From IMG/VR virus record IMGVR_UViG_3300033143_006101, positions 1 to 64,000 of that record: a stretch of 64,000 bases of DNA; one strand, written 5' to 3'. Position numbers and translations under genes: made by a program. The notes under the pieces are model-generated. The model ran no database searches. It was not told where the DNA came from and was given only the letters and a program-made list of their open reading frames with translations. Shown piece after piece: positions 10,192 to 42,892 of this stretch (positions are counted from its first letter, which is position 1; each line of letters opens with the position of its first letter).

Positions 10192-10218
10192 ATACTTAAA
10201 ATAGATGAAATTTTAAGG
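10192..10218 (-). promoter_or_regulatory. putative phage late promoter driving rfaE1 (CCTTAAA-N16-GTAT)
   Basis: One mismatch to the motif found upstream of structural operons; same 16-nt spacer. Confidence 0.5.
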
Positions 10219-10255
10219 TAAAAAATAGTAGTTAAAAAAGAATATAACTCCATTT

Positions 10256-10282
10256 CCCTAAATTATATAAAAGATCTTCTAT
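10256..10282 (+). promoter_or_regulatory. putative phage promoter CCCTAAA-N16-CTAT
   Basis: Motif copy in the divergent intergenic region. Confidence 0.55.
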
Positions 10283-10322
10283 CATTTAATATGTTTATAA
10301 AGTACAAATAAGGGGGATAATC

Positions 10323-10616
10323 GTGTCAATTTTGAATTGCTTTGATTGTACATATAATAAAATAGGAGCTGAATGCACCCATCCAAAAAGTAGTTCACGT
10401 AAATATGATGAAAACCAGTATCACTGTACATTTTTTAAAGAAAGAAAAAAAGCAAATCTTACAGTAGTAAAATGTTTAGAATGTACGTATCATGAACCAG
10501 CTGATTGTAAACATCCTAAAAATACCCCAGCTAATTTTTTAAATTTTTGGTATAGAACTGGCGATAAAGAATGTAATTACTTTAAGAAAAAAAATGATGT
10601 TTTAGTACGACAATAA
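10323..10616 (+). CDS. Cys-rich protein with two internal repeats
   Basis: CxxCTY...CxHPK...CxxFK occurs twice. Confidence 0.6.
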   Translation: MSILNCFDCTYNKIGAECTHPKSSSRKYDENQYHCTFFKERKKANLTVVKCLECTYHEPADCKHPKNTPANFLNFWYRTGDKECNYFKKKNDVLVRQ

Positions 10617-10635
10617 ATAAGAAAGATGGTATAAA

Positions 10636-10896
10636 ATGAATGATATAATTAATGCTTTATTTGAATTAGGTGGTGCTATTCTAACATGGTTTAATGTAAA
10701 GAAAATCCTAAAAGATAAAGAAGTAAAAGGTGTATATTGGCCTATTTGGTTATTCTTTACAAGCTGGGGATATTGGAATTTATATTATTATCCCAGCGTA
10801 GATCATCAATGGAGCTTTTATGCTGGCATATTATTAGTATTTGGTAATACGGTATGGGTTTCATTAGCATGGTATTATAATAGAAAGCAGAAGTAA
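10636..10896 (+). CDS. PQ-loop/SemiSWEET-like 3-TM membrane protein
   Basis: Three hydrophobic segments; KDKEVKGVYW loop. Confidence 0.5.
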   Translation: MNDIINALFELGGAILTWFNVKKILKDKEVKGVYWPIWLFFTSWGYWNLYYYPSVDHQWSFYAGILLVFGNTVWVSLAWYYNRKQK

Positions 10897-10921
10897 TTTA
10901 GATTTGATTTTTTATACATAT

Positions 10922-10992
10922 GGGTCGGTAGCTCGAAGGACGAGCAACGGGCTTTTAACCTGTAAGCGAGAGTTCGATTCTCTCCCTGCCTA
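10922..10992 (+). tRNA. tRNA-Lys(TTT)
   Basis: ACGGG-CTTTTAA-CCTGT; GAGAG-TTCGATT-CTCTC; one acceptor-stem mismatch. Confidence 0.8.
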
Positions 10993-10996
10993 ATAA

Positions 10997-11069
10997 CTCT
11001 CCGTAGCTCAGTAGGAAGAGCATCTGCCTTCTAAGCAGATTGTCACAGGTTCGAGCCCTGTCGGAGAGG
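10997..11069 (+). tRNA. tRNA-Arg(TCT)
   Basis: CTCTCCG/CGGAGAG acceptor; TCTGC-CTTCTAA-GCAGA. Confidence 0.92.
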
Positions 11070-11081
11070 CATGGAGAAAAA

Positions 11082-11267
11082 ATGGAGTTAAGAACATTTA
11101 TAGACATGCCCATTCTTAACACACAACAAATAGATTCTATGTCTAATGAAGAATATAAAAAGTTGTGCGAAAGGGGTAAACATAAGATTAAAGAAAGTTA
11201 CTGTCATATTGGAGAAGATATTATGGATGTAATTGTAAAAGGCAGAAACTTTGATAGATATGCTTAA
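11082..11267 (+). CDS. hypothetical protein
   Basis: Start MELRTF after GGAG, downstream of the tRNA. Confidence 0.5.
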   Translation: MELRTFIDMPILNTQQIDSMSNEEYKKLCERGKHKIKESYCHIGEDIMDVIVKGRNFDRYA

Positions 11268-11273
11268 ATAACT

Positions 11274-12060
11274 ATGAGACCGGAAAATATGTATAATTAC
11301 CCAAAATATTTTTATGGAGTAATCTATAAGATTACAAACATTCAAAATAATAAATGTTATATTGGAAAAACTTCTAATGTATACTTTAAAAATATATTAG
11401 AAGTCATTTTTATGAGGCACTAAAAAAGAGAGATAACAATAAGAGATATTTTTATAATACTATAAGAAAATATGGAAAAGAAAATTTTAAAATAGAAATT
11501 TTAGGTTTTTGCTATTCTGAAGAAGAGTTATATGAATCTGAGATTGAATGTATAGCTTTTTATCAAAGTAGTAATTCACTTTATGGATATAATTTAACAA
11601 AAGGTGGGGATGGTGGAGATTTAAGATGTAATTTTTCTGAAGCAGATAAATTAAAATGGAGAAAAAAGATAAGTAAAGCAACAAAAGAAAGAATACCGTG
11701 GAATAAAGGATTAACAAAAGAAACGGATAAAAGAGTATTAAAAAGTAGTAATACGATGAAAAAGCATGTGCGAACAAAAGAACATTGTGAAAAAATTAGT
11801 AAAGCTATTAAAGGTAAAAAAAGATCAGATGAAATAAAAAAGAAAATGTGTGAGGCACACAAAAAAAAATACGGAAATGGTTTTTTTGGAAAAAAACATA
11901 CTAAAAAACAAAAGAAAAAATGAGTTTATTACGAAAAGGAAAACCGAGTAAAAGAAAAGGAAAAATGCATGAGGAGATCTTTGGAAAAGAAAAATCGAAA
12001 GAAATAAAAGAAAAGATAAGAAGCACACTTTTAACTAAAAATTCTAAAAAGGTAGAATAA
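11274..12060 (+). pseudogene. frameshifted GIY-YIG homing endonuclease with NUMOD3-like repeats
   Basis: GVIYKITN...CYIGKT, then after a shift near 11390: IRKYGKENFKIEIL...GYNLTKGGDG...PWNKG...FFGKKHT; second shift near 11915; absent from the ORF track. Confidence 0.8.
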
Positions 12061-12061
12061 T

Positions 12062-12619
12062 ATGGAAGAGACCTTAGTTTTAAACACAGGATATATTCCT
12101 ATTAGAATTGTATCGGATCGTGAGGCTATTTGTCTTCTTTATCAATCAAAAGCTTATACTGTAATTGAAACTGATCGTGTAATGCGTTCACCTTCAATTG
12201 TATTTAAAATACCATCCGTAATTGCTCTTGTAGGATATAATAAATTTCCACAAAGGAAAGTTGGATTTTCTAAATTGAATATAATTTATCGTGATGATAT
12301 GACTTGTCAATATTGTGGAAAAAGATTTAACATGAATGAACTTACAATAGATCATGTTATCCCAAGAAGTAGATGGGCAGATGAAAAAAGAACAAATAAG
12401 AAAAATTGGACAAATTGGCTTAATTGCGTCTGTTCATGTAAATGGTGCAATAATGCAAAAGGGAATAAACTTCTTCATGAATTAAGATGGAGTTTACCTA
12501 GAAAACCTTTTGAACCAAAATATCTGCCTCATATTGTTATTTCTTTCGATAAAGCAGAAAAAAAAGGTTGGATCCCATTTTGCAAATTTAATGTAAAATT
12601 ACTGAACAGACTTTCATAG
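12062..12619 (+). CDS. HNH endonuclease (McrA-like)
   Basis: TLVLN...RDDMTCQYCG...TIDHVIPRSR...CSCKWCNNAKG. Confidence 0.9.
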   Translation: MEETLVLNTGYIPIRIVSDREAICLLYQSKAYTVIETDRVMRSPSIVFKIPSVIALVGYNKFPQRKVGFSKLNIIYRDDMTCQYCGKRFNMNELTIDHVIPRSRWADEKRTNKKNWTNWLNCVCSCKWCNNAKGNKLLHELRWSLPRKPFEPKYLPHIVISFDKAEKKGWIPFCKFNVKLLNRLS

Positions 12620-12874
12620 GAGGACAGTAATGAGGGATAGATATTATAGTGCAGATGATTTTGTAGAAGACATTCTTGACATAGCGTCAGATGTTTTTGA
12701 GATTTTTATTGATATAAGTTTAGGTATCATAGGTCTTGCGTTTAATGACTTCTAAGAATCTAAAACATAGAAGCGAAGATAGTATTATTGGTTCATTTTT
12801 ACTTATTTTAATGGTAGCATCTGCAGTAGCTTTAGTTATTGCTTGCGGATATCTATTATTTAATGGGTAAATAA

Positions 12875-12946
12875 GCCCCTGTAGCTCAGTGAAAGAGCAC
12901 ATGACTACGGATCATGGTGTCGAGGGTTTAAATCCTTCCAGGGGCA
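12875..12946 (+). tRNA. tRNA-Arg(ACG)
   Basis: GCCCCTG/CAGGGGC acceptor; CATGA-CTACGGA-TCATG. Confidence 0.88.
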
Positions 12947-12959
12947 CAGGTATATTATA

Positions 12960-13250
12960 ATGAGACCGGAGATTAAAATTATGAAACTATATAAATGTAG
13001 GTGTATGATAATCCCTGAAGAGGAATTAGAAATACAAGAATATAAAGAAGGAGCTTTAAAAGAAAAGTATTGTTGTGACGGCTGTGATGCTTATTTTTAT
13101 CCTTGTAACCTCTTCAATTACTTTATGTATTATCTTGGTAAACCTTTTGGGTATGAAGCTTGGGGTTTGAACGAAATGCTGACTTGGAATGATATAGAAT
13201 GGTGGTTAGTAAAAATAAAAGTAAGAATAGAAGAATTTTTTAATAAGTGA
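12960..13250 (+). CDS. hypothetical protein
   Basis: ORF between tRNAs. Confidence 0.5.
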   Translation: MRPEIKIMKLYKCRCMIIPEEELEIQEYKEGALKEKYCCDGCDAYFYPCNLFNYFMYYLGKPFGYEAWGLNEMLTWNDIEWWLVKIKVRIEEFFNK

Positions 13251-13319
13251 CCGTAGCTTAATTGGTAAAGCATTCGGATGATAACCGAAGGAGCGAAGGT
13301 TCAATTCCTTCCGGTCGCA
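13247..13319 (+). tRNA. tRNA-Ile(GAT)
   Basis: GTGACCG/CGGTCGC acceptor; TTCGG-ATGATAA-CCGAA. Confidence 0.88.
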
Positions 13320-13328
13320 ATAAAATAG

Positions 13329-13357
13329 TTGATATAGTCGAACTTACTGTATATATT
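13329..13357 (+). promoter_or_regulatory. sigma70-like promoter TTGATA-N17-TATATT, probably giving a near-leaderless transcript of the HNH gene
   Basis: Canonical spacing; ATG at 13367 lies 9 nt after the -10 box with no Shine-Dalgarno. Confidence 0.5.
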
Positions 13358-13366
13358 AAATTTAAA

Positions 13367-13907
13367 ATGTATAGAAGGTTCGAATCTATAAAAAACACTA
13401 GAAGATTAAATGGTTATATTGTTATATATAAACCAGATCACCCCAAAGCAATGACATCCAAAAATTGGGAGGGTTATATTTACGAGCATATAGTGGTTGC
13501 TGAACAAATATTAGGTCGAAAACTGACAAGTACCGAGGTTACACACCATGAAGATGAAGTAAGTTCAAACAATAGTCCAAGTAATTTAAAAGTTTTTAGA
13601 ACACGAGGAGATCATAATAGATACCATAAAGGATTTGAAATTATTAGATTATCAGATAGTACGTATTAATGTAGTATTCATTCCTGCATAGATTGTGGTA
13701 AAGAGCTTTTTAAAGTAAAAATTACTAGATGTTGGGAATGCCATAAAATTTGGAAAGCAAAAAACATACCTTCAAAAAAGGTTTTAGAAAAGTTAATTTG
13801 GAAAAAACCAACAGTATATATAGCAAAGGATTTTGAAGTTTCAGACAAGGCAGTAGAAAAATGGTGTAAGAAGTATAATCTTCCAAAACCCCCAAGAGGT
13901 TATTAGA
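13367..13907 (+). pseudogene. HNH homing endonuclease with in-frame stops (HNH + zinc finger + HTH tail)
   Basis: YIYEHIVVAEQILGR...HH...NNSPSNL; frame continues past TAA at 13667 as CIDCGK...CWEC...AKDFEVSDKAVEKWCKKYNLPKPPRGY, then TAG where W is usual. Confidence 0.75.
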
Positions 13908-13923
13908 TGAAACATAAATATAA

Positions 13924-14000
13924 GGGTTCTTAGCTTAGCTGGTCGAAAGCACTTGACTCATAATCAAGAGATTTCCTGGGTTCGAATCCCAGAGAGCCCA
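13924..14000 (+). tRNA. tRNA-CAT (Ile2/lysidine type or elongator Met)
   Basis: GGGTTCT/AGAGCCC acceptor; CTTGA-CTCATAA-TCAAG; TTCGAAT. Confidence 0.88.
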
Positions 14001-14016
14001 ATATTTCATAATGGTT

Positions 14017-14057
14017 AATCCCGGCATTATTCTCGACATAATGTCGGGATTTTTTTT
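14017..14057 (+). terminator. rho-independent terminator closing the tRNA region
   Basis: AATCCCGGCATTAT-loop-ATAATGTCGGGATT followed by a T run. Confidence 0.85.
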
Positions 14058-14064: not shown

Positions 14065-14091
14065 CCTTAAATTTATGAAAATTCCGACTAT
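14065..14091 (+). promoter_or_regulatory. putative phage late promoter CCTTAAA-N16-CTAT
   Basis: Directly after the terminator, at the start of the structural region. Confidence 0.65.
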
Positions 14092-14123: not shown

Positions 14124-14267
14124 GTGTATTTTAAAAACTTTAAAGATTTAGGTCAGTTATTAAAAAAATCGGATGATTTGGGGTCAAAAAATCTCGAAGA
14201 GGAAGAGATGGAAGAAGCCTGGACTGAAGGTCCAGCAAAATCACAACAATCTAAGGAGCCAGCATAA
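14124..14267 (+). CDS. small acidic protein (47 aa, not in ORF track)
   Basis: GAGGT Shine-Dalgarno, GTG start, MYFKNFKDLGQLLKKSDD... Confidence 0.55.
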   Translation: MYFKNFKDLGQLLKKSDDLGSKNLEEEEMEEAWTEGPAKSQQSKEPA

Positions 14268-14268
14268 T

Positions 14269-14514
14269 ATGAAACTTAACAGCAACACAATTTTACTAGA
14301 TTCAAATGATGTACAGAAACTTATAGGTATCGCGGAAAATATTGCAAAAGAAAATAATGTATATAATGTAAAAGATGTAGAATTTGCTTTGGATCCAACA
14401 CGAGGAAACGTTAGTTTTTCAACTCAGCTACCTCCAAAAGAAATTACATCAATGTATAACAAAGAAAGGACAAAAGAAGATAAATTACAAGAGTTAGCTA
14501 ATATAGTAAGATAA
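14269..14514 (+). CDS. hypothetical protein
   Basis: Start MKLNSN after AAGGAG (track ORF at 14173 is over-extended). Confidence 0.55.
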   Translation: MKLNSNTILLDSNDVQKLIGIAENIAKENNVYNVKDVEFALDPTRGNVSFSTQLPPKEITSMYNKERTKEDKLQELANIVR

Positions 14515-14515
14515 G

Positions 14516-14887
14516 ATGCCAAGAAAAGTTAAAACTATAGGAAATGATTTACCATCTCCTAGTAGTAAGCATCAAGTTTTAGGAACTGTTTTTTTAGTAC
14601 AAGAAGGTACATCTACTGGAATTTATACTTTTAATTTTGAAGATGGTAGTATCATATACTTCGAAAATGAAATCAAACAATCTTTTGAATATCTTTTAGT
14701 GGATAACATAGGAGAAGGTAGAGTACGCTTCGCTTTTAATAAAATAGGTTTACCATTAGTTAGTTCAATAGACGGAGCAAAGACGTTGCGTGCCGGGGAT
14801 AGTTTGTATATCCAGGATTTTGTAAGAAATATCACTCTATTTTTTATAGAATCTTCTATTGTTGAATTAGTTTTAATGTCTAAATAG
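14516..14887 (+). CDS. putative small virion protein (one TSTG)
   Basis: Beta-rich ORF in the late operon. Confidence 0.5.
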   Translation: MPRKVKTIGNDLPSPSSKHQVLGTVFLVQEGTSTGIYTFNFEDGSIIYFENEIKQSFEYLLVDNIGEGRVRFAFNKIGLPLVSSIDGAKTLRAGDSLYIQDFVRNITLFFIESSIVELVLMSK

Positions 14888-14896
14888 GAGGTTATC

Positions 14897-15193
14897 ATGC
14901 CAAGTCCTTTCCAAACTAAAAAAAATTTAGAAAAAAGTATTAAGCAAAGTTACGTCAGCTCTGGGGGTATGAGAGTCAAACGATGTAAAGTAGATATTGA
15001 TAATATAGGATTAATCAAAATTTCTATGGCACTAAATCCCGGGAGTTTACCTGCTGAAGTTGTAGAAGAACTTATTTATAAAACATTCGATAGTGTGGGT
15101 GTTAAAGCATTCGTAAAAGATGGTTGGAATGATATAAGAATCGATCAGCAATCACCATCGGTTGTTAGGGTGAATGTAGAAGGATATATGTAA
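14897..15193 (+). CDS. hypothetical protein
   Basis: AGGAGG Shine-Dalgarno. Confidence 0.55.
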   Translation: MPSPFQTKKNLEKSIKQSYVSSGGMRVKRCKVDIDNIGLIKISMALNPGSLPAEVVEELIYKTFDSVGVKAFVKDGWNDIRIDQQSPSVVRVNVEGYM

Positions 15194-15195
15194 CT

Positions 15196-15648
15196 ATGAA
15201 TGATCTATTTGATAATCCGAGTTTTAATGATGATAATCTTAAAGAATATATCTATAGTGATCTGAAACAAATTAAGCAAGCTGTTAAAAAAGATATTTTT
15301 CAAAATGCAAGTGTAGATACAGCTCTTATGGAACTATTAGATAATGATCAAACTAAAGTTGAAAAAGAAAAACATTTTTTAGCTGAGATGTCTCATGAAG
15401 AGTTTGCAGAATGGTTAATGCATACACATGATTCTCTTGTAAATAAACTAATGGGCCTTTCAAAACAAGATTTTTTTGAGGGAGATGCTTATGTAGATCG
15501 ATATTTTAGTATAACATTTATGAATGAGTTAAATAATTTATTATCGCTTTATGGGTTAAGAGTACCAACTGGAGTGATTAAAATCTTAGAAGAGAATAGA
15601 TATAATAAATTAATAATGATTTTATCTATTTTAAATTATACCAAATAA
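15196..15648 (+). CDS. hypothetical protein
   Basis: ORF in operon. Confidence 0.55.
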   Translation: MNDLFDNPSFNDDNLKEYIYSDLKQIKQAVKKDIFQNASVDTALMELLDNDQTKVEKEKHFLAEMSHEEFAEWLMHTHDSLVNKLMGLSKQDFFEGDAYVDRYFSITFMNELNNLLSLYGLRVPTGVIKILEENRYNKLIMILSILNYTK

Positions 15649-15659
15649 AGGATTATTTA

Positions 15660-15818
15660 ATGATATTTCCTAAAGATAAGAAAATAAGAATTAATTTAGA
15701 ACGAAGAGTGCAAGCTGATGGAGAAGGAGAAGCCGAACCTTGTCCAGATTTGTATGTGCTATTATGTAATCATGATGAAATAATTACTTGTAACAATGGA
15801 CAATGGATAATCGATTAA
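15660..15818 (+). CDS. small hypothetical protein (52 aa, not in track)
   Basis: MIFPKDKK...WIID*, stop abuts the fibre ATG. Confidence 0.45.
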   Translation: MIFPKDKKIRINLERRVQADGEGEAEPCPDLYVLLCNHDEIITCNNGQWIID

Positions 15819-18800
15819 ATGGCTATAATAACTTCAAAATACCATCAAGACTTAAATACAAGTTGTGGTATACATATCCCTCACTCGTTTGAATATGCTA
15901 CGTCTACTGGTAGAATAAATGCTACAGGATTAACTGCAGTAGATGTTTATAAATTAGCTCTGCAAAAAAGTGATGATACTTTATGGATTTTAACAAATCA
16001 TGGTCCTGTTACCTGGAAATTACTTGGTGGTGCTACTTGGGGTACTATTACTGGAACTTTATCCGATCAAACTGACTTGCAAGATGCTTTAGATGATAAA
16101 TCTGATACAACACATGGGCACACACATGCTTCTACTACCGGAAAAACAGCAAATGATCACCATAACCAACAGCATGCTATTGATGGGAGTGATCATACAG
16201 GCACATTGGATCACTCAGAAATAAACGACGATGAGAATACCAAGCATAGGATTATAAATGATGCAGATACGAGTGTTACTGAGTTATGGTCAGCTGATAA
16301 AATAAATACTGAACTCGGGACAAAAACTAGTACAGGTCATACACATGAAGAATCAGATATTACTGATTTAGATCATGATGCTCAAAAAATTAAGGGAGTT
16401 ATAGTCGATGACTCGGCCAAAGCGGATGGAAAGGTACTAACATATGAATCCTCAACTGGAGAGATAATATATGGTGATGTAGTAACTACTGATGAGAAGG
16501 TTAAGGCAAGTGCGGGTGATCCTACAACAGGATATTTAGATGCTAAAGTTGACAATGCAACTATAGAAATAAGTGCTAATAAATTAAAAGTTAAAGATAG
16601 TGTATTTTCAAGCACGGGCCATGCCCATACTGAATCGGATATAACAGATTTGGATCATTATGATAGTTCTGATTTCTCTACAGATTTTGGGAATGCCGAT
16701 CTTGCAAATCTTGGTACTAAAAACCACAGTGATCTTAATGATGATGAAGTCGCACAGCACCGTATTATAAATGATTCAGGAACTAGTGCTACTGAACTCT
16801 GGTCAGCTGATAAAATCAACGCAGAGTTGAATACTAAAACTTCAACTGGATATGTGTTAGATCAATTCACAGATATGAAAGAGCCCACCGGATTTCCCAA
16901 TAGAACAGATAGTACTATATCGTTCTCTGATTCAAGCCCAGACAGAACTTTTACTATTGCTCCGGCAGTAAGTACTTTTGACTACTATATTAAAGGAGTA
17001 AAGTATACAAAATCTGGTGCGGTGACACGGCAAATAACTGACGACGAAGGATTGCACTTTATATATTTTGATGGGGAAACCCTTACATCGACAACTACCT
17101 GGAGTGATATTCTTTTTACTGATTATGCCATAGCATCAATAGTTTATTGGGATGATGACAACAATTTACATGTATACTTCGCAGACGAACGACATGGCAT
17201 AACCATGGATGGGGCGATGCATAAACTGTGGCACGATATTATTGGATGTGCGTGGGAAGAAGGATTAGCTTTAGGAAACATGACTGTAAATGGTAGTGGT
17301 GATGTTAATAGCCACGCCCAGTTCTCTGTATCTGATGGAGAAATACATGATGAAGATTTGGAACATGAGATAGAAGATGGAAGTCCTCAGGATTTAAGTA
17401 CCATCGCACAGATACCTATTATGTATCGCTCTGGTGCTACTGGCGTATGGCGTATGAAAGCAGCAGATGACTTCCCAATCATATATGATGGGACTGCTGG
17501 TTATAATCCAACAGGTGGCAACGATAGAGTACCCTATAACGAATGGACTGGTAGTACTTGGCAACTCATAGAAGTAGGATCAGATAATGACTTTGTTCTC
17601 GTTCATTATTTTGCTACTAATGATACCGAACACCCTATTATTGGAATACAAGGGCAAGATGAGTATACAAATCTCGGCAATGCTAGAGAAGGTGCAACTA
17701 CCGAAATAAATAACCTAGTGACTTCAGGTCTACCAACTGCTGAGTTTACACCAATAGCTACATGTATTTTTCAAACTAATGATGACGGTTATACTAATAC
17801 TCCTCATGCAAAAATAAGAAGCACTGATACTGGAGATGATTATGTAGATTGGAGAGGTTCAAAATTATCTCAATCTGCGGGTACTAGCAGTCACCCAAAC
17901 CTATCTGAATTAGGCTTCGATGAATCAGGCCATAACGGATTCCAGAGAGAAACATATCAAGATACTTCTAATCCTGATGCAGACCATGATAGTGCAGATA
18001 CTAATGCTATAGGTATAAAATTCAGAGCAGGTGACTTCTGGGAAAACACAAGCACGGATATCGTATATATATGCCTTGATGCTACAGCTACTGCTGCAAT
18101 ATGGAACGCGATTGTAGATGTGAGTACAGGCCAAACTCTTACAAATAAAACTCTAACTACACCTACTATTGGCGACTTGACAAATGCTACACATGACCAT
18201 ACTGATAATGCGGGTGGTGGTGTTCTAAATCACTCAGACTTGAACGATGACGAAGCTACAAAACATAGACTTATAAATGACTTGGATACTTCCGCAACCG
18301 AGTTATGGTCCTCAGATAAGATTAATACTGAACTTGGGACAAAGACTTCAACAGGCCACACCCATACAGAAAGTGATATTACAGATCTCGATCACGATGC
18401 CCAGAAAATTAAAGGTGTTATTGTTGATGATTCAGCAAAGGCTGATGGGTACGGATTAGTTTATGAAAGTTCTACGGGAAATATTATATATTCGGCTAGT
18501 GCTGGTGGAACAGACAATAATGCTATTCATGACAATATAGCTGGCGAAATATCTATTATTACAGCAAAGAGTTCTCCGACAGGCTCAGATAAGCTTTTGA
18601 TAGAAGATGCTGCAGATACCAATAAAAAGAAGAGCATAGATATTCAAAATCTTCCACTTAGGCCATTGACCGATGCTTATATTTGGGTTGGGATCGGTGG
18701 AGTTGAAACAGCTGTACCTTTGGCTCATACTCATAACCATGCGACTGATATTACTAATGTTCTTCCAGATCAACATCATAATGAAGATCATCAGGCCAGA

Positions 18801-20942
18801 CATAATAGTGGGGGTGCCGATGCGTTAAAACTTGATGATTTAGCTACTCCCGATGACAATACAGATCTAAACGCCACAACTTCTGCACATGGTTTATTGA
18901 AAAAACTTGATAATGACGCAACCCATTTTCTTGACGGACAGGGAAACTGGAGCACACCAGACCATGCTAAGTTATTAAACCTTGATTATGTGGGCTCAGA
19001 ACATACAGGGTTTATGCGTGATGCTTATCTAACAACTTCAGATCCTACGGAAGAAAATGATAATGCAGACACGGCTGCCCTGGGTCGGGAGTTTAATGAA
19101 GGTAACGCTTGGGTCAATACCTCTTCGGGTCGGGTGTTTGTTTGTAAAGATGCTTCACTAGGCGAGGCTATATGGTATGAGGTAGGTGCGTATGATATGG
19201 ATATGCTAACTGGTTATACTATGAAATATATTTCAGACGAAGAAGTTGAGATTGCTTTCGGTTACTGTAGAGATAATAATGATACTTGGAATATTGATTC
19301 ACATATTCCTTTGACGATTGATATAACTGACAGCGGGAAAAATGGATTAGATGTTGATAGTGTTACAGCAAACTCATGGTATTTTGTTCATGTTATTAAG
19401 AATCCGACTACCCTGGAAGTGGCTGGACTATTCTCTCTTAGTCAGTACAAGCCAACTCTTCCGAGTGGCTTTACAGTATTTAGAAATATCGGAGCGTTTC
19501 CGACAGATGGAACAAGTGATTTAATAGCAGGCCATACAGTAGGGGAAGGACTGGATAAATATTTTATATATGATATAAGACATGAGATGGCGTATGCTGA
19601 TACTACTGGTTCGTGGGAGGATGTTGATTTAAGCAGTCGTGTTCCTCCTGATGTGCGGCTGGTGGAGTTAGGATTTTCAACTCCGTCTGGTGGAGATGAT
19701 GGAATTTATGTAAGAGAAAAAATATCAGGTCAAGGGTCAACTGATTATCAATTAGATATACAATTATCCGGTGGGCCAGGTGCGTGTACTAGTAGATGTG
19801 GCTGTGATGAAGATCAGATTATTCAGTGGAACTCGTATTGGGGTGGCGGTGCATGGTATCTGTATGTGTTAGGATTTTATATATCGTTAGCTGCGACAAA
19901 ATTTGTAGGTATATATTGGGAAACAAGTGACTTCGATGAAAGTCAGCAGATAGATTTTGATACAACAGCTTCCGGTGCGAATGTATCGGGTAATGTTACA
20001 AACTTCCCAGTATGTGTAAGGATAACAGACACAGATATTTTAGATGCAGTAAGAGATGGTGCTCCTGATATAAGATTTCTTGATAAGGATGGAACAACAT
20101 GGCTGGACTATGAAGTTGAGAAATGGGATAAGGTCGGCGAAGAAGCAGTTGTTTGGGTATTGGTTCCACAGATAGATGGCAATAAAGATGACGATTATAT
20201 CACTATGTATTATGGTAATATTTGGGTACAAGATGGTCAGGATAGCAAGGCTGTGTTTAGTATTGCTAATGGCTTTCTTGGAGTATGGCACATGAATCAA
20301 GATCCATCTGTAGAGGATATACACGACAGTTCTGAAAAAGGAAATGATGGTGTACCTACTGCTAATATGGAAGATTATGATTTGATGGCAGGCCCAATAA
20401 ATAAGTCTATTGATTTTTATGTTGATGGCTCTGAATATATAAATGTAACAGGTTTTGATGAAGATATGACTGATGCGACTTTGAGTGCGTGGGTATATGT
20501 AGATACAGAAGAAGATACGGTCAAGGGCGTGTTGTTCAGCAGAGGTACAGATACTTGCGGATTACACTTGTCAGATGATTCTGGTGATAATAGAGTTTGC
20601 TATCACTGGGATGGGGATGCTGGTGCTTGGGGTTGGCAAGGTGGCGGTATTGTAGATGCAGAGGAATGGAACTTTGTCGCCATGACTATTGATGCAGATG
20701 CGGACGATACAGGGTATGTTGGAAAGAACGACGGTGATTGGGATAGTGCAACAAACTCTATAACTACTGGAACGGTTACTCTGGACGATTTAAGGATAGC
20801 AACGGATGAGGCATCCGCATCCAGAGGGTTCGATGGTAAAATTGCAGAAGTAAGAATTGAGAGTGTTATACGAACAGACGACTGGTTGAAGTTGTGCTAT
20901 ATGAATCAGAAAGCGACTGATAAGTTAATAAGTTTTCCATAA
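15819..20942 (+). CDS. large fibre/receptor-binding protein with His-rich repeats and C-terminal DUF2341-like and LamG-like domains
   Basis: WGTITGTLSDQTDLQ, HxH(E/T)ESDITDL repeats, NFPVCVR...DIRFLDKDG...YEVEKW...ITMYYGN, F(D)GKIAEVRI. Confidence 0.75.
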   Translation: MAIITSKYHQDLNTSCGIHIPHSFEYATSTGRINATGLTAVDVYKLALQKSDDTLWILTNHGPVTWKLLGGATWGTITGTLSDQTDLQDALDDKSDTTHGHTHASTTGKTANDHHNQQHAIDGSDHTGTLDHSEINDDENTKHRIINDADTSVTELWSADKINTELGTKTSTGHTHEESDITDLDHDAQKIKGVIVDDSAKADGKVLTYESSTGEIIYGDVVTTDEKVKASAGDPTTGYLDAKVDNATIEISANKLKVKDSVFSSTGHAHTESDITDLDHYDSSDFSTDFGNADLANLGTKNHSDLNDDEVAQHRIINDSGTSATELWSADKINAELNTKTSTGYVLDQFTDMKEPTGFPNRTDSTISFSDSSPDRTFTIAPAVSTFDYYIKGVKYTKSGAVTRQITDDEGLHFIYFDGETLTSTTTWSDILFTDYAIASIVYWDDDNNLHVYFADERHGITMDGAMHKLWHDIIGCAWEEGLALGNMTVNGSGDVNSHAQFSVSDGEIHDEDLEHEIEDGSPQDLSTIAQIPIMYRSGATGVWRMKAADDFPIIYDGTAGYNPTGGNDRVPYNEWTGSTWQLIEVGSDNDFVLVHYFATNDTEHPIIGIQGQDEYTNLGNAREGATTEINNLVTSGLPTAEFTPIATCIFQTNDDGYTNTPHAKIRSTDTGDDYVDWRGSKLSQSAGTSSHPNLSELGFDESGHNGFQRETYQDTSNPDADHDSADTNAIGIKFRAGDFWENTSTDIVYICLDATATAAIWNAIVDVSTGQTLTNKTLTTPTIGDLTNATHDHTDNAGGGVLNHSDLNDDEATKHRLINDLDTSATELWSSDKINTELGTKTSTGHTHTESDITDLDHDAQKIKGVIVDDSAKADGYGLVYESSTGNIIYSASAGGTDNNAIHDNIAGEISIITAKSSPTGSDKLLIEDAADTNKKKSIDIQNLPLRPLTDAYIWVGIGGVETAVPLAHTHNHATDITNVLPDQHHNEDHQARHNSGGADALKLDDLATPDDNTDLNATTSAHGLLKKLDNDATHFLDGQGNWSTPDHAKLLNLDYVGSEHTGFMRDAYLTTSDPTEENDNADTAALGREFNEGNAWVNTSSGRVFVCKDASLGEAIWYEVGAYDMDMLTGYTMKYISDEEVEIAFGYCRDNNDTWNIDSHIPLTIDITDSGKNGLDVDSVTANSWYFVHVIKNPTTLEVAGLFSLSQYKPTLPSGFTVFRNIGAFPTDGTSDLIAGHTVGEGLDKYFIYDIRHEMAYADTTGSWEDVDLSSRVPPDVRLVELGFSTPSGGDDGIYVREKISGQGSTDYQLDIQLSGGPGACTSRCGCDEDQIIQWNSYWGGGAWYLYVLGFYISLAATKFVGIYWETSDFDESQQIDFDTTASGANVSGNVTNFPVCVRITDTDILDAVRDGAPDIRFLDKDGTTWLDYEVEKWDKVGEEAVVWVLVPQIDGNKDDDYITMYYGNIWVQDGQDSKAVFSIANGFLGVWHMNQDPSVEDIHDSSEKGNDGVPTANMEDYDLMAGPINKSIDFYVDGSEYINVTGFDEDMTDATLSAWVYVDTEEDTVKGVLFSRGTDTCGLHLSDDSGDNRVCYHWDGDAGAWGWQGGGIVDAEEWNFVAMTIDADADDTGYVGKNDGDWDSATNSITTGTVTLDDLRIATDEASASRGFDGKIAEVRIESVIRTDDWLKLCYMNQKATDKLISFP
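16210..18491 (+). repeat. diverged internal duplication of an ~88-aa module (~16210-16473 and ~18229-18491; partial copy ~16724-16851)
   Basis: TELWSxDKINTELGTKTSTGHTHxESDITDLDHDAQKIKGVIVDDSAKADG...YESSTG in both full copies. Confidence 0.85.
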
Positions 20943-20951
20943 GAGGTTAAA

Positions 20952-21479
20952 ATGAGCAAGATACCATATCAAATATTAGTAGAGTCATCGACAGGAAAAG
21001 TTCTATCAGCTGGGTATACCAGACTTAGAGCTGGTGAAGGACAGACAAGGTATAAAAATGAGCAGTTACCTGCTGGAGCAAATCTAGCAAATGAGACTTG
21101 GTATCGAACAAGTACAGGTTATGAGACTAATACATTAGTTACAAATAAAGCAAATAGAATAAAAGAAATTGATGAAAAAACTAAAGAGCTGATTGAACAA
21201 GGGTTCGCGTTTGATGGGCACATATTTAGTTTGTCTTTGGAAGCACAAAAAAACTTCCTAGCTTTAAAAACTGTGTCTGCTTTGATGTCCTGGCCAAAAG
21301 CATTGACTACAAAATGTGATATGGAGTATCTGTTAGCAGAAGAAGATTTAGATGCTTGTATAGGAACAGGGCTTGCTGTTGTAAATGGCTATCTTGATTC
21401 TGGTAGAGCTTTAAAAATAAGTACTAATGCTGCTACAACACAGGAAGAGCTTGACGCTATTGTAGATAATAGAACATAA
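20952..21479 (+). CDS. DUF4376-like tail fibre assembly/associated protein
   Basis: Follows the fibre gene; GFAFDGHIFSL...C-terminal AATTQEELDAI. Confidence 0.6.
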   Translation: MSKIPYQILVESSTGKVLSAGYTRLRAGEGQTRYKNEQLPAGANLANETWYRTSTGYETNTLVTNKANRIKEIDEKTKELIEQGFAFDGHIFSLSLEAQKNFLALKTVSALMSWPKALTTKCDMEYLLAEEDLDACIGTGLAVVNGYLDSGRALKISTNAATTQEELDAIVDNRT

Positions 21480-21488
21480 AGAGGGGCT

Positions 21489-22223: not shown

Positions 22224-22245
22224 TAGCTATGGATCCATAGTTAAG

Positions 22246-22284
22246 TTAAAAAGCCCTAAAGATACCTTCTTTAGGGCTTTTTAA
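22246..22284 (+). terminator. rho-independent terminator (potentially bidirectional)
   Basis: AAAAAGCCCTAAAGA-TACCT-TCTTTAGGGCTTTTT. Confidence 0.85.
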
Positions 22285-22332: not shown

Positions 22333-22359
22333 CCTTAAAAAACTTCAAAAAATCACTAT
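22333..22359 (+). promoter_or_regulatory. putative phage late promoter CCTTAAA-N16-CTAT
   Basis: Exact motif copy after the terminator. Confidence 0.65.
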
Positions 22360-22420: not shown

Positions 22421-22933
22421 ATGGCTGATTATAAAGGTGTTATAAGATTTATCGGAGAAAACAACGACTTCGCTTTAGTTGAGGAAACTCGTATTTATCA
22501 AAATAATATTGATACAAGTACAGGAATTGGAACAGGAGATGGGTCTGAAAGAACGTTCTCTGGATCATTAGAACCAGTTGTAGAAGAAGGCGAACTCGTA
22601 ATTAACGTAGATGGTGCAGCACAAAATGCTTCTGATTCTGGTGGAGTTATTTCTGGTAGTGATATCACAACTTCATCAGGATATGTCAGTGCTATTGATT
22701 ATGCTTCTGGTGCAATTCAACTTACTTTCACTGTTGCAGCAACACCACCAGCAGATAAAGCAGTAGATGCAGTATATCAATATAGTGCACCTTCAGAATT
22801 TCCAGAAGGATTAAAGTTTATAAAAGGTGACTTTTCAAACTTTAGTGTTGGGGATTCTATAGGTTACGATTACGATGTCGATGCAGACCTTAAAGATGGT
22901 TATTATATATCAGAAGCTTATATAGAAGCTTAG
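22421..22933 (+). CDS. putative virion decoration protein (beta-sandwich)
   Basis: GTGDGSERTFSG...IDYASGAIQLTF...P...YQY pattern; strong Shine-Dalgarno; TSTG and TSSG. Confidence 0.5.
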   Translation: MADYKGVIRFIGENNDFALVEETRIYQNNIDTSTGIGTGDGSERTFSGSLEPVVEEGELVINVDGAAQNASDSGGVISGSDITTSSGYVSAIDYASGAIQLTFTVAATPPADKAVDAVYQYSAPSEFPEGLKFIKGDFSNFSVGDSIGYDYDVDADLKDGYYISEAYIEA

Positions 22934-28671: not shown

Positions 28672-28698
28672 CCTTAAAATTTACGAGAATTTTTCTAA
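28672..28698 (+). promoter_or_regulatory. putative late promoter CCTTAAA-N16-CTAA, overlapping an inverted repeat (TTTTAAGGT-ATTC-ACCTTAAAA)
   Basis: Motif copy upstream of the sheath gene. Confidence 0.6.
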
Positions 28699-28744
28699 TT
28701 TTTTAACAGTAATGTATTAAGAAAATGACTTGAGAGGTATAATT

Positions 28745-30106
28745 ATGGCATTAGGATATCAACTACCTGGAACAACAATAGAAGAAGTAACTAGTCCAGC
28801 TTCCGCGAATCCTACTACTACACAACGAATTCCTTGTTTTATAGGAGTAGCTAGTGATTATAAATTGGTAAGATATGAAGAAGTTGTAAGATCATCAACC
28901 GGTTTAATAGATAGTTTAGAATTTACCAGTGAAGGAATCTATGAAGTAGTGGAATGCGGTTCACAAAAAGGACTTGCAGATTATGTAGAAGGCACTCATT
29001 TTAATGTTGCAAGCAATCAAATAGTTTGGACTTCTTCTGGTATTGTTACTATAGGTGCAACATATTTCGTTACGTATAGGTATAACAGACCATCAAGTGA
29101 CTATAGCTATAAAGTATTTTATAATTATGAAGATATAGTTGCTGATTTAGGAGAAGATATACCAGACAATCCTCTTGTAAATATTGCAAAAATAGCTCTT
29201 AGATATTTTAGTAATCCCGCCATTGCCGTAGTACAAGTTCCAGCTACAGAAACTACCTCCGATTATGTAGATGCCCTTGATCTTGTAAAATATAGAGATA
29301 CACAAACTGTATGTGCATTAACAACTACTGTAGCAGTACGAGCTCTTCTTGTTTCTCATGTAGTAGAAAGAAGTTTACCAGATAATGGCAGATATAGAAT
29401 TACATATACAGGAGCACCAGCTAATACACCTGTAGGAACTGAAGATGATCCTAGTTCATTAAGAGGTATGGCTGTCGCAATTCAACAAGAAAGAGTTATT
29501 TTTGTCAATGCGACAAGAGCTAAATATTATTATAATGATCCAAATACAGGAGTAGAAACATATGCTGTAGTAGATGGAGCATTTATAGCTGCAGTTGTAG
29601 CAGCATTCAGAGATTCATTCTCTCATCCTACAACTACATTACTTAACAGGGTAATGCCTGGTATAGAATTGTATGATGAAGATTACGATGATTATTATGA
29701 TGAGAATAAACTAACTCTATCCGGTTCGAGCAGTTTATTTCTTATGGCTCCATCTGGAGGTTTAGTTCGAATCATAGATGATTTAACAACAGATAATTCA
29801 ACAGTAGAGCGTAATAATATTAACATCATTACAGCAAAAGATTATATTGCTAAAGATGTTGCTGTTCAAATGAATAGAACTTTTAAAGGTTCTCTAATTA
29901 AAAACAGACCTCAATATCAAGGAGTAGTTTTAAATTATTTAACTATATTATTTAAAGCTTATCTCCAAAACAATGTTATTGAGAATATAGGAACATTAAA
30001 AGTAACACTTCCAACTAATAGACGTGATACTGTAAATATTTTTTATAGTTACAGTGCTGTATATACACACAAGTATACTGAGGGTACATACACACTTGTA
30101 GTTTAA
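28745..30106 (+). CDS. contractile tail sheath protein
   Basis: YQLPGTTIEE N-terminus, IPCFIG, RIIDDLTT...NINII..KDYI C-terminal core; start MALGY. Confidence 0.85.
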   Translation: MALGYQLPGTTIEEVTSPASANPTTTQRIPCFIGVASDYKLVRYEEVVRSSTGLIDSLEFTSEGIYEVVECGSQKGLADYVEGTHFNVASNQIVWTSSGIVTIGATYFVTYRYNRPSSDYSYKVFYNYEDIVADLGEDIPDNPLVNIAKIALRYFSNPAIAVVQVPATETTSDYVDALDLVKYRDTQTVCALTTTVAVRALLVSHVVERSLPDNGRYRITYTGAPANTPVGTEDDPSSLRGMAVAIQQERVIFVNATRAKYYYNDPNTGVETYAVVDGAFIAAVVAAFRDSFSHPTTTLLNRVMPGIELYDEDYDDYYDENKLTLSGSSSLFLMAPSGGLVRIIDDLTTDNSTVERNNINIITAKDYIAKDVAVQMNRTFKGSLIKNRPQYQGVVLNYLTILFKAYLQNNVIENIGTLKVTLPTNRRDTVNIFYSYSAVYTHKYTEGTYTLVV

Positions 30107-39472: not shown

Positions 39473-39477
39473 ATGAT

Positions 39478-40839: not shown

Positions 40840-40861
40840 ATTTCAATGAGAGATACTAATT

Positions 40862-41299
40862 ATGAGAGAAGGATTATTAATAGGATTAAAAGCATATAAA
40901 ACTACTGTATATTCTAAAAAAATAATTGCGGGAATTTTCCCCAAGATATTTGCAGAAATTTTAAAATCATTCATGACAAGAAATGCTATGGGAGATCCTG
41001 CTCCTATTGGTTATGATTGGAATAAGATAATGGAATTTCAAATAAATATGGGTACAATAATTGATCAAGAAAAATTTGATTATTTGGATAATGTGGTTCT
41101 TCAATTTTTAAAAAGTTATAGCTTTGTTATACCGCCTTATCGTTTTTTTATAGAACTTCCAGAAGAAGAAATAATTAAATATACTACTATTTGTGATGGG
41201 TTTAAAGGAAAAAGTTGGGATGATATAATAGATGTTTTTATTGATGCCACATATAATTTATTTAAAACAGGCACAATGCGAGATCAACCTTTAGAATAG
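40862..41299 (+). CDS. hypothetical protein
   Basis: ORF in the baseplate operon. Confidence 0.5.
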   Translation: MREGLLIGLKAYKTTVYSKKIIAGIFPKIFAEILKSFMTRNAMGDPAPIGYDWNKIMEFQINMGTIIDQEKFDYLDNVVLQFLKSYSFVIPPYRFFIELPEEEIIKYTTICDGFKGKSWDDIIDVFIDATYNLFKTGTMRDQPLE

Positions 41300-41309
41300 G
41301 AGAAAAGAG

Positions 41310-41798
41310 ATGGATAATGGAGGAAACGGAGAAGAACCTGGTGCTATTCAAATAACTGAACCAATTGTTTTTGAAATAGAGGCTCCTGTAATACCAGGAT
41401 TACCAGTTATCACTACTCCCCCGGGAGTAGGATTAGGTGGGGTGGCAATAAATATTCAATATATTTGTCCTTTATCTATTCATTGTGGAACAGATATTCC
41501 TTGTAATTTTACAAAAGCGATTGCTTTACCTTTATCATTACCATTACCAGTGTTTTCTTTTCCACCGTCTTTTGCTTTTCCAGTATTTGGATTCAGATTT
41601 GAAATACCACCTCCAATCTTTGTAAAATGCCCAGCATTTGAAGAGGAGGATGCCTCTGCTCAAACAGTGAAAGACGCAGAAGCTGCTCCTCCAACAGAAG
41701 ACCCAACTGAAATCCCAGCACCAGAAGATGCTTCTGTTGATTTAAGAGAGGGAGTAGTAACAGATAAGAAAATGGCTGATACACTTAAAAGTGGTTAA
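41310..41798 (+). CDS. Pro-rich hypothetical baseplate-region protein
   Basis: LPLSLPLPVFSFPP repeats; 4 Cys. Confidence 0.5.
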   Translation: MDNGGNGEEPGAIQITEPIVFEIEAPVIPGLPVITTPPGVGLGGVAINIQYICPLSIHCGTDIPCNFTKAIALPLSLPLPVFSFPPSFAFPVFGFRFEIPPPIFVKCPAFEEEDASAQTVKDAEAAPPTEDPTEIPAPEDASVDLREGVVTDKKMADTLKSG

Positions 41799-41800
41799 AT

Positions 41801-42373
41801 ATGGCATTATTAAAAGCTACATTCACAGCTGAATTAGTAGCTGCTTTTTCTGCTCAAGCATGGGGTATAACAGCACAATTATTTACTAGTGCAGTTAACA
41901 ACTATATATTGTCAGCAACAGCAACTGTACCTGTTACTGGAACAGTAACTCCACCTTCAGGATCACCATATCCAGCTATAGGAACAGGAGTAGGTAATCC
42001 AGTAACAACAGCATCTGCTGGTCTCTACAGTGCTTGTATATCCGCTTTCGCTTCTCCATTATGGGCAACATTAGCAGGAATAATAGTACCCGCAATAGAA
42101 ACGCTGATGATAACATCTACTTTAGTTACTACTGTAACTGGAGTGTTGCAAGGAACAGGAACATTAGTAGCTTGGACAGCACCAGGAGGAGGAGCATTAT
42201 TAACAACAATGAACATTGCTTTTACAACCGGACAACTTTGGTCACAAGTAGCAGTAGATATCGCTGATGCTGTAGATATTTATCTAAAAACTGTAGTTGT
42301 ATCTACAGTAGATGCTGGTATTATTCCCCCATCATCTTGGGTAGGAACAGGTGCTGGAGGAGTTCTTTCATAG
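41801..42373 (+). CDS. hydrophobic Ala/Thr/Gly-rich protein with internal repeats
   Basis: Three W..(T/L/V)A...(A/V)...Y...(V/A)T units. Confidence 0.5.
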   Translation: MALLKATFTAELVAAFSAQAWGITAQLFTSAVNNYILSATATVPVTGTVTPPSGSPYPAIGTGVGNPVTTASAGLYSACISAFASPLWATLAGIIVPAIETLMITSTLVTTVTGVLQGTGTLVAWTAPGGGALLTTMNIAFTTGQLWSQVAVDIADAVDIYLKTVVVSTVDAGIIPPSSWVGTGAGGVLS

Positions 42374-42382
42374 GAAAAAATT

Positions 42383-42856
42383 ATGGCATTAGATGCACAA
42401 ATAACTAAAGCAATTGAGGTATTAGAAACCGAAATCTATCAAGATGGGAATACTCCCAAAAAGGGAACAGATGCCCTAGCCGAAATGGTAGTAGTAGTTA
42501 AAGAATTAGTTACATCCAAAAAATATGTTATTAGTGAAAAACTAAGATTTCTAAATGAACGGAAATTATTATTACAAAATTATCAAACTCATTTAGATGA
42601 TTTTGCTACTAAAACTCAAATACAGCAAAAGTATGAATTATTCTATAAAAATTCAGGGACTGTATTGGATATCTCTGGATCCATGGATGAAATTAATTCT
42701 AATATTAATTTAGCGATGCAGGGCATTATTAGAAAATTAAGGGGATATCGTAGAGAAGTCGATGAGATCGCTTTTAGAATTACATTTCTATCTGATCAGC
42801 TGAGTTTTTGGAATGAAGCAACGGAAAAATTAACAGAATTAGAAGCGTTACTCTAA
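42383..42856 (+). CDS. coiled-coil hypothetical protein
   Basis: Helical ORF at the operon end. Confidence 0.5.
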   Translation: MALDAQITKAIEVLETEIYQDGNTPKKGTDALAEMVVVVKELVTSKKYVISEKLRFLNERKLLLQNYQTHLDDFATKTQIQQKYELFYKNSGTVLDISGSMDEINSNINLAMQGIIRKLRGYRREVDEIAFRITFLSDQLSFWNEATEKLTELEALL

Positions 42857-42865
42857 TAAAAAAGT

Positions 42866-42892
42866 ACTTAAAGTTACTTAAACTTTTACTAT
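42866..42892 (+). promoter_or_regulatory. putative late promoter ACTTAAA-N16-CTAT
   Basis: Motif copy upstream of the gp25/gpJ/glycosylation/fibre operon. Confidence 0.55.

What the first reader, a model, noticed from the sequence alone, without database searches (positions are those of the whole stretch)
10192..42892. Strictly spaced bipartite promoter motif (C/A)C(T/C)TAAA-N16-CTA(T/A) at late-operon starts
Seen: copies at 14065, 22333, 28672, 42866 and 10256 (+) and a one-mismatch copy at 10218 (-). All are intergenic, all have exactly 16 nt between boxes, and two lie directly after terminators. It does not match sigma70 consensus; the upstream box loosely recalls sigma32/sigma28 -35 elements. 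Inference: recognition site of a phage-encoded or redirected alternative sigma factor that defines the late regulon.
Basis: partly seen in the sequence, partly recalled or inferred. Interest (0 to 1): 0.6.

Follow-up and report, generated by a model that had tools for sequence, protein, structure and literature searches.

The report
Late promoter of a jumbo phage
The repeated two-box motif is real and behaves like a phage-specific promoter in front of tail, baseplate, portal and other late genes of an uncultured 253-kb phage, most likely read by one of the phage's own sigma factors; this is a new example of a well-known kind of control.

Summary
MCYTAAA-N16-CTAW occurs 7 times in the window against 0.8 expected, and 17 times in the whole 252,876-bp phage genome. 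Sixteen copies are on the + strand and 15 are intergenic, in a genome that is 91% coding. The count peaks only at a spacing of 16.

It is the top two-block motif found de novo in upstream regions. The boxes need redrawing: the core is (C)CTTAAA-N17-TATnnT-TTaA.

Copies precede the tail-sheath, baseplate, portal and prohead-protease units, and also Pol X, ligase and SLT genes.

In a sister phage (73% tail-sheath identity), nine orthologous positions keep the boxes, and all nine carry T at −13 instead of C. This includes the two intragenic window copies. Four more related phages are enriched for the core motif.

The genome has separate canonical TTGACA/TATATT promoters, three diverged σ70-family genes, and no detected RNAP β, AsiA or MotA.

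Most likely this is the late-promoter class of a phage-encoded sigma factor. I favour σ"A" at 140.6–141.4 kb, but that assignment is inferred. No transcription start data could be obtained.

The parts
10192..10218 (-). Class-1 promoter copy with G at −13 (CCTTAAA-N16-GTAT), facing ORF 9195-10151(−). It forms a divergent pair with the 10256 copy.
   Evidence: (matrix score 24.3)
10256..10282 (+). Class-1 promoter copy (CCCTAAA variant), 41 nt upstream of ORF 10323-10616. tRNA-Lys and tRNA-Arg lie further downstream.
14065..14091 (+). Class-1 promoter copy directly after tRNA-Met and a terminator. It heads the unit 14173-22223, which includes the 1707-aa tail-fibre-like protein.
   Evidence: The G001 counterpart lies upstream of the ortholog of ORF 14516.
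22333..22359 (+). Class-1 promoter copy about 50 nt after a terminator hairpin. It heads the unit that starts at 22421.
   Evidence: The orthologous site in G001 is at 91892.
28672..28698 (+). Class-1 promoter copy 32 nt upstream of the tail-sheath gene.
   Evidence: The orthologous site in G001 is at 85155.
42866..42892 (+). Class-1 promoter copy 22 nt upstream of ORF 42914, at the head of the baseplate unit.
   Evidence: The orthologous site in G001 is at 70884.
52403..52429 (+). Class-1 copy inside ORF 52218-53180; likely an internal promoter.
   Evidence: It is conserved at the orthologous intragenic position in G001 (49339), with the lineage-specific C-to-T switch at −13.
55123..55149 (+). 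Class-1 copy inside ORF 53177-55738; likely an internal promoter ahead of the 1204-aa tail-spike-like gene 55749-59363.
   Evidence: It is conserved in G001 at 46631 with the C-to-T switch.
14017..14051 (+). Intrinsic-terminator hairpin plus T-run, ending the tRNA cluster just before the 14065 promoter.
22246..22284 (+). Strong terminator-like hairpin upstream of the 22333 promoter.
   Evidence: −23.2 kcal/mol, z −6.5
28730..30106 (+). Tail sheath gene, the first gene behind the 28672 promoter.
   Evidence: (phrog_279, E 1e-17)
43354..44817 (+). Baseplate wedge gene, the second gene behind the 42866 promoter.
   Evidence: phrog_6, E 1.5e-23

Best explanation
The motif is one temporal class of promoters of an uncultured 253-kb phage. 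Its geometry is that of a σ70-family promoter. The −35 box (C)CTTAAA(nTT) sits at −36 to −30. Exactly 17 bp then precede a −10 hexamer TATnnT at −12 to −7. The base before the hexamer (−13) is lineage-specific: C in this phage. A conserved TTaA follows at −6 to −3. Host core RNA polymerase carrying a phage-encoded σ70-family factor would read it and switch on virion genes (tail sheath, baseplate, tail fibres, portal, prohead protease) together with a few repair and lysis genes.

Shown by analysis: the motif is non-random, strictly spaced, intergenic and co-oriented with genes. It is conserved at orthologous positions in related phages. It is distinct from the canonical σA-type promoters in the same genome. 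The phage encodes three sigma-like proteins.

Inferred: that transcription starts there, that a phage sigma rather than a host factor reads it, and which sigma does so. I favour the 251-aa σ"A" (genome 140628-141383, − strand) over its paralog σ"C" (231532-232383). The third, σ"B" (143088-143741), more likely serves a second, G000-specific motif.
For: Statistics. It is the top de novo dyad in upstream regions of G000 (11 observed against 0.86 expected).

Sister phage G001: the top de novo dyad there is the same motif with T at −13 (12 against 0.53 expected; 27 sites at spacing 16 only). Nine orthologous promoter pairs keep CTTAAA, TA and TTT..A. Identity is 0.88 in the boxes, 0.53 in the spacer and 0.51 in the flanks. 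All nine pairs differ at −13, C in G000 and T in G001. Two of these pairs lie within coding sequence.

Wider family: CTTAAA-N17-TATnnT stands upstream of the MJ0330_N-like gene in five lineages. The core pattern is enriched over the reversed control in four further σA-bearing phages: 8/1, 6/0, 10/1 and 4/1.

Downstream genes: tail sheath, baseplate, portal operon, prohead protease, tail-fibre-like protein.

Distinct from host-type promoters: canonical promoters with an A-tract, TTGACA, N17 and (TG)TATATT occur in both phages.

Sigma genes: three ORFs give Sigma70_r2/r4, TIGR02937 and phrog_1740 hits. The AlphaFold model of σA has pLDDT 84, and every listed Foldseek match among its top 50 is a sigma factor.

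Other machinery: no RNAP β, AsiA or MotA hits.

For σA specifically: its predicted σ4 recognition helix is nearly invariant across 26 homologs, matching the invariant −35 box. The equivalent helix of σC diverges between G000 and G001. σA ends the replication operon and is followed directly by a class-1 promoter in G000 and G001. In G001 that operon sits behind a canonical σA-type promoter. σB and the class-2 motif are both missing from G001.
Against: All sigma hits score below the curated family cut-offs. The −10 half (TATnnT) could be read by host σA, so an activator-plus-σA mechanism is not excluded. The co-occurrence with σA is partly circular, because the relatives were retrieved through σA or the tail sheath. 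G001 is only 88% complete, so the absence of σB there is weak evidence. PF00562 might miss a very diverged phage RNAP. The host is unknown.
Confidence: 0.65

Rival explanations
1. Host primary σA reads the TATnnT hexamer, and a phage-encoded activator (T4 MotA/AsiA-style sigma appropriation) binds the CCTTAAA box in place of a −35 contact.
For: The −10 half is σA-like: T, A and T at −12, −11 and −7 are nearly invariant. Strict spacing would also suit an activator docked on RNAP.
Against: The box occupies exactly the −35 hexamer position with a 17-bp spacer, not the −30-centred position of a MotA box (the MotA position is from my own knowledge). No AsiA or MotA homologs were found. Three sigma genes are available. 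The concerted change at −13 fits a sigma helix-3.0-type contact such as σS K173 with C(−13) (PMC3367168).
Confidence: 0.12
2. A host alternative sigma factor (σB-, σ28- or σ32-like) is borrowed for late transcription, and the C/T difference at −13 reflects different hosts.
For: The −35 box TAAAnTT recalls σ28, and CTTAAA recalls σ32 (own knowledge). No data link any phage sigma to the site.
Against: The σ28 −10 (GCCGATAA) and the σ32 −10 (CCCCATnT) are absent. The phage family carries its own conserved sigma with an invariant recognition helix. That sigma has no relatives in 185,579 prokaryote species genomes. The motif tracks this phage family.
Confidence: 0.1
3. The sites are not promoters. 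They could be operators for a repressor, RNA processing or leader elements, or another DNA signal.
For: There is no start-site evidence, and two copies lie inside genes.
Against: The architecture is bipartite, with a non-conserved 16-nt spacer of fixed length. The sites are co-oriented with genes, sit 20-82 nt from start codons, and two follow terminators. There is no Rfam match. The flanks show no extra folding. Base frequencies at −12, −11 and −7 are typical of a −10 hexamer.
Confidence: 0.06
4. Chance clustering in AT-rich DNA.
For: One-mismatch matches are not enriched. A pattern scan of all viral contigs returns many single hits.
Confidence: 0.01

Closest known systems
Bacillus phage SPO1 sigma cascade (gp28 for middle, gp33/gp34 for late promoters)
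   Same: A large virulent phage without its own RNAP replaces host σA with phage-encoded σ70-family proteins. These read phage-specific −35/−10 pairs with fixed spacing, alongside host-type early promoters (own knowledge; the SPO1 switch is summarised in PMC13401047).
   Different: The box sequences are unrelated. No sequence relative of σA or σB exists in 50,697 deposited phage genomes. Here the −10 stays σA-like, whereas the SPO1 boxes do not (own knowledge).
σS-type promoters of E. coli with C(−13)
   Same: A housekeeping-like TATnnT hexamer is made selective by the base at −13, which helix 3.0 of the sigma reads (K173 with C(−13), PMC3367168). G000 has C at −13 in 14 of 18 intergenic sites.
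   Different: The −35 box is different and much more strongly conserved. The sister phage uses T at −13. No residue-level mapping to σS was done.
σ28/FliA promoters (TAAAGTTT-N11-GCCGATAA)
   Same: The −35 core is TAAAnTT. The best PDB sequence match to the σA profile is FliA region 2 (E 0.003), and there is a weak FliA_WhiG hit.
   Different: The −10 GCCGATAA (CGA motif) is absent. The hits are only at superfamily level.
T4 late (gp55/gp33/gp45) and middle (MotA/AsiA) promoters
   Same: Phage-directed re-targeting of host RNAP to temporal classes.
   Different: T4 late promoters have no −35 element (own knowledge), whereas here the −35 box is the best conserved part. No AsiA or MotA homologs were found.
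Group 2 jumbo phages that lack an RNAP but encode sigma factors (Iyer et al. 2021, PMC7824862)
   Same: A jumbo phage with no RNAP hit but with sigma factors.
   Different: This lineage has no close isolate. Portal and sheath are only 23-36% identical to Bacillus phage G and Virus Rctr197k. It has a family A DNA polymerase and a tubulin next to the sigma gene.

Membership tests
σ70-family (−35/−10) promoter | Two conserved boxes separated by a fixed spacer of 17±1 bp | tested here: met
   CTTAAA-N17-TATnnT. Only one spacing is enriched, in both G000 and G001.
σ70-family (−35/−10) promoter | −10 hexamer with near-invariant A(−11) and T(−7) | tested here: met
   Position counts in 18 G000 and 15 G001 intergenic sites: T and A are fixed by the search pattern. 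The unconstrained −7 position is T in 14/18 and 14/15 sites.
σ70-family (−35/−10) promoter | Located upstream of, and co-oriented with, transcription units | tested here: met
   Fifteen of 17 sites are intergenic, all co-oriented, 20-82 nt from start codons, and two follow terminators.
σ70-family (−35/−10) promoter | Transcripts start about 7 nt downstream of the −10 hexamer | not testable with these tools
The phage is uncultured.
Host primary σA promoter (TTGACA-N17-TATAAT) | −35 hexamer TTGACA | tested here: not met
   CTTAAA is invariant instead. A separate set of TTGACA-N17-(TG)TATATT promoters exists in the same genome and in G001. Generic σ70-like matches are not enriched in the window (76 against 96.5 expected).
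σ28/FliA promoter | −10 element GCCGATAA | tested here: not met
   The frequency matrix shows C/T-TATnnTTT, with no CGA.
T4-type middle promoter (MotA box plus AsiA) | Phage encodes MotA and AsiA | tested here: not met
   PF09158 and PF09010 give no hit at E ≤ 1 in the complete genome.
Phage-encoded σ70-family factor (candidate reader) | σ2 and σ4 domains present | tested here: inconclusive
   σA, σB and σC hit Sigma70_r2/r4_2, TIGR02937 (E 5e-8 to 9e-11 for A and B) and phrog_1740, but all score below the curated cut-offs. The σA model has pLDDT 84, and the listed Foldseek matches are all sigma factors, with probability about 1 but E only 0.006-0.06.
Phage-encoded σ70-family factor (candidate reader) | Binds host core RNAP and directs initiation at the motif | not testable with these tools
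   This needs biochemistry or genetics.
Late regulon | Downstream genes are virion and lysis genes expressed late | tested here: inconclusive
   Function fits for sheath, baseplate, portal, protease, tail-fibre-like and SLT genes. Pol X-like and NAD-ligase genes are also included, and timing is unknown.

The most novel reading that the evidence does not exclude
This phage family carries a private sigma/promoter pair whose specificity at a single position (−13) has flipped between sister phages. At least nine orthologous promoters, two of them inside coding sequence, changed C to T in concert. That would be a natural case of sigma-promoter co-evolution producing near-orthogonal pairs. The two paralogous sigmas, A and C, have similar σ4 helices and may share the −35 box and divide the timing between them.
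Probability: 0.35. Interest if true: 0.55.

Novelty: new member of a known kind. Interest (0 to 1): 0.4.

Why it matters
The motif gives an operon map and a likely temporal switch for an uncultured jumbo-phage lineage that has no isolate. It pairs a compact, strictly spaced promoter with a small family of phage-only sigma factors. That pair could be tested as an orthogonal expression module. The all-or-none C/T change at −13 between sister phages is a clean natural experiment on how a sigma factor and its whole regulon drift together. It does not reveal a new principle of transcription.

Tried and rejected
- **Near-identical or annotated relatives.** Megablast of 12 kb against deposited phages found nothing. 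tblastn with σB and σA found nothing. The sheath and portal found only distant kin.
- **Pattern scan of all viral contigs** with the 14-base core.
- **One-mismatch search in the window.** Not enriched, so degenerate copies cannot be called from the pattern alone.
- **Class-2 motif** (TTTTTGTAAAAT...CTTTATATA) as a conserved second class. It is not found at orthologous positions in G001.
- **Multisubunit phage RNAP.** No PF00562 hit. A very diverged enzyme cannot be excluded.
- **Known RNA family under the sites.** Rfam found only tRNAs.
- **σA relatives in prokaryote genomes**, as a clue to the host. None found.
- **Mapping the −13 contact residue.** I did not try to map it onto σS at residue level, because no reference sequence was available as a tool result.
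- **Genetic code.** No alternative code was used or needed.
Full report
**Context.** The window is the first 64 kb of a 252,876-bp IMG/VR virus record (33% G+C). CheckV rates it complete, and a 72-bp terminal repeat points to a circular assembly. It has no near relative among deposited phages. Its sheath and portal are 23-36% identical to those of Bacillus phage G, Virus Rctr197k and a few actinophages. Window positions 14-60 kb hold + strand virion genes: a tail sheath, a baseplate wedge, a tail-spike-like protein and a 1707-aa tail-fibre-like protein. A cluster of nine tRNAs lies at 4.7-14 kb.

The genome holds 17 copies, against 5 for the reversed control. Only the 16-nt spacing is enriched: 17 copies, against 0-8 at spacings 12-20. 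Fifteen copies are intergenic in a 91%-coding genome, once an over-called ORF start is corrected. Each is co-oriented with the next gene and sits 20-82 nt from its start codon. An unbiased count of 5-mer/N13-20/4-mer dyads in 193 upstream regions ranks this motif first, at 11 observed against 0.86 expected. The − strand copy at 10192-10218 has G at the first downstream-box position. I accept it for its context and matrix score, not for the pattern, because one-mismatch hits are at chance level. Both upstream terminators are confirmed.

**The boxes, redrawn.** So the −10 half does look like σA, and the −35 half does not. The expected start is about 10-12 nt after the C.

**It is a distinct class.** The same genome has canonical promoters with an A-tract, TTGACA, N17 and (TG)TATATT, for example at 181109, 223957(−) and 230864. 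The sister phage has about ten of these. Together with strong AGGAGG ribosome-binding sites, they suggest a Firmicute-like host; that is an inference. A third motif, TTTTTGTAAAAT-N~18-CTTTATATA, occurs about eight times, including upstream of one sigma gene.

**Conservation.** A sister phage, G001 (217.7 kb, 88% complete), shares 73% sheath identity and a median of 47.5% identity across shared proteins. Analysed independently, its top dyad is CTTAA-N17-TTAT, at 12 observed against 0.53 expected. It has 27 copies of the T form at spacing 16 and only 4 of the C form. For nine G000 promoters whose downstream gene has an ortholog, a site lies at the same place in G001. Box positions are 88% identical, against 53% in the spacer and 51% in the flanks. 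The −13 base differs in all nine pairs: C in G000, T in G001. Two of the nine are the intragenic window copies at 52403 and 55123. Retention of the motif inside coding sequence, together with the lineage-specific switch, argues that they are internal promoters.

In more distant contigs, reached through homologs of one sigma protein (40-60% identity), CTTAAA-N17-TATnnT again precedes the MJ0330_N-like gene in five lineages and an SLT gene in one. Four further large IMG/VR relatives are enriched for the core pattern over its reversed control: 8/1, 6/0, 10/1 and 4/1.

**Regulon.** Downstream units with a known function are tail sheath, baseplate, tail-fibre-like protein, the portal operon, prohead protease and SLT transglycosylase. 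Also included are a Pol X-like protein, an NAD-dependent ligase, a phrog_1745 phosphoesterase and the intein-bearing MJ0330_N-like protein. "Late" therefore fits most members, but it rests on gene function alone.

**Who reads it.** There is no RNAP β hit and no AsiA or MotA. Three ORFs are diverged σ70-family proteins:
- σA: 140628-141383(−), 251 aa.
- σB: 143088-143741(−), 217 aa.
- σC: 231532-232383(+), 283 aa.

All three hit Sigma70_r2 and/or r4_2, TIGR02937 and phrog_1740, always below the curated cut-offs.

An AlphaFold model of σA built on 26 homologs has pLDDT 84. Every listed match among its best 50 PDB hits is a sigma factor, although E is only 0.006-0.06 because the domain orientations differ.

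σA homologs occur only in metagenomic phage contigs. There they sit in a fixed order, tubulin, small ORF, helicase, σA, at the end of the replication module. None is found in deposited phages or in 185,579 prokaryote species genomes.

I favour σA for three reasons:
- Its predicted σ4 recognition helix is almost invariant across the family, as is the −35 box. σC is a paralog with a similar helix, but that helix differs between G000 and G001 even though the two phages share the same −35 box.
- A class-1 promoter directly follows the σA gene in G000 and G001. In G001 the σA operon lies behind a host-type promoter.
- σB and the class-2 motif are both absent from G001, which pairs them and leaves σA or σC for class 1.

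These are inferences, and the co-occurrence with σA is partly built into how the relatives were found.

**Precedent for the −13 switch.** In E. coli σS, a lysine in helix 3.0 contacts C(−13) and sets selectivity over σ70 (PMC3367168). That shows a σ70-family protein can read this position. A change in the phage sigma followed by its whole regulon would explain the nine-for-nine C/T difference. A difference between hosts could explain it as well.

**Comparison and verdict.** The system works like the SPO1-type strategy: host-type early promoters, then phage sigma factors with private promoters. It also matches the sigma-bearing, RNAP-less jumbo phages described by Iyer et al. (PMC7824862). The box sequences, the sigma family and the phage lineage are new. 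The −35 box recalls σ28 (TAAAnTT), but the σ28 −10 element is absent, so this is not a σ28-type promoter. It is a new member of a known kind. The evidence for function is sound but indirect, and the most interesting detail is the concerted −13 switch.

**Limits.** There are no RNA data. The host is unknown. My ORF calls are mechanical. Sigma family membership is below the curated thresholds.

Noticed in passing
L014:2418-2462 (genome 231417); also L037:2715-2760, L038:2006-2050(−), genome 157885(−), 201130(−), 239173: A second phage-specific motif, TTTTTGTAAAAT-N~18-CTTTATATA, occurs in about eight intergenic regions, including directly upstream of the σC gene. It is not conserved at orthologous positions in the sister phage, which also lacks σB.
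   Followed up: partly
L037:4976-5012 and 5109-5146; L014:1865-1897; L038:15957-15990(−): Canonical host-type promoters with an A-tract, TTGACA, N17 and (TG)TATATT occur in both phages. They probably form the early class and hint at a Firmicute-like host.
   Followed up: partly
window 22222-22243; 11 more copies in the genome (e.g. 81028, 95229, 96700, 97755, 97773, 246204): A near-perfect 20-bp palindrome, TAACTATGGATCCATAGTTA, is repeated about 12 times, mostly between genes. GGATCC occurs 116 times in this genome but only twice in the sister phage, which has no copy of the palindrome.
   Followed up: partly
L013:8803-9882(−): A tubulin/FtsZ-family gene (PF00091, E 5e-18) sits next to the sigma genes. 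The order tubulin, small ORF, helicase, σA is conserved in all relatives fetched.
   Followed up: partly
L013:2367-5408(−) and L038:5686-9981(+): Inteins sit in late genes. The 1013-aa MJ0330_N-like protein carries Hint and LAGLIDADG domains. The 1431-aa portal has a central insert (residues about 372-806) that matches segments of unrelated genes (DNA polymerase, thymidylate synthase) in other phages. Relatives also carry inteins in DnaB and the helicase.
   Followed up: no
L038:16058-16576(+) (genome 224058-224576): A 172-aa ORF gives a very weak sigma-like hit (TIGR02937, E 0.03, model positions 4-120). It lies behind a class-1 promoter in both G000 and G001, and could be a fourth regulator. 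It has no Pfam or PHROG hit.
   Followed up: partly
L014:3638-4519(+): An Apyc1-like anti-Pycsar metallo-β-lactamase-fold protein (PF23023, E 4.5e-19) lies just upstream of the class-1 promoter at 233534. AcrVA2-like genes appear in relatives.
   Followed up: no
window 4735-14000: Nine tRNA genes (His, Trp, Leu ×2, Lys, Arg ×2, Ile, Met) are interspersed with small ORFs. The 10256 promoter may drive tRNA-Lys and tRNA-Arg.
   Followed up: no
window 599-2404(+): A 601-aa ORF gives only partial thymidylate-synthase-family hits (E about 1e-8), which is unusually long for that family.
   Followed up: no
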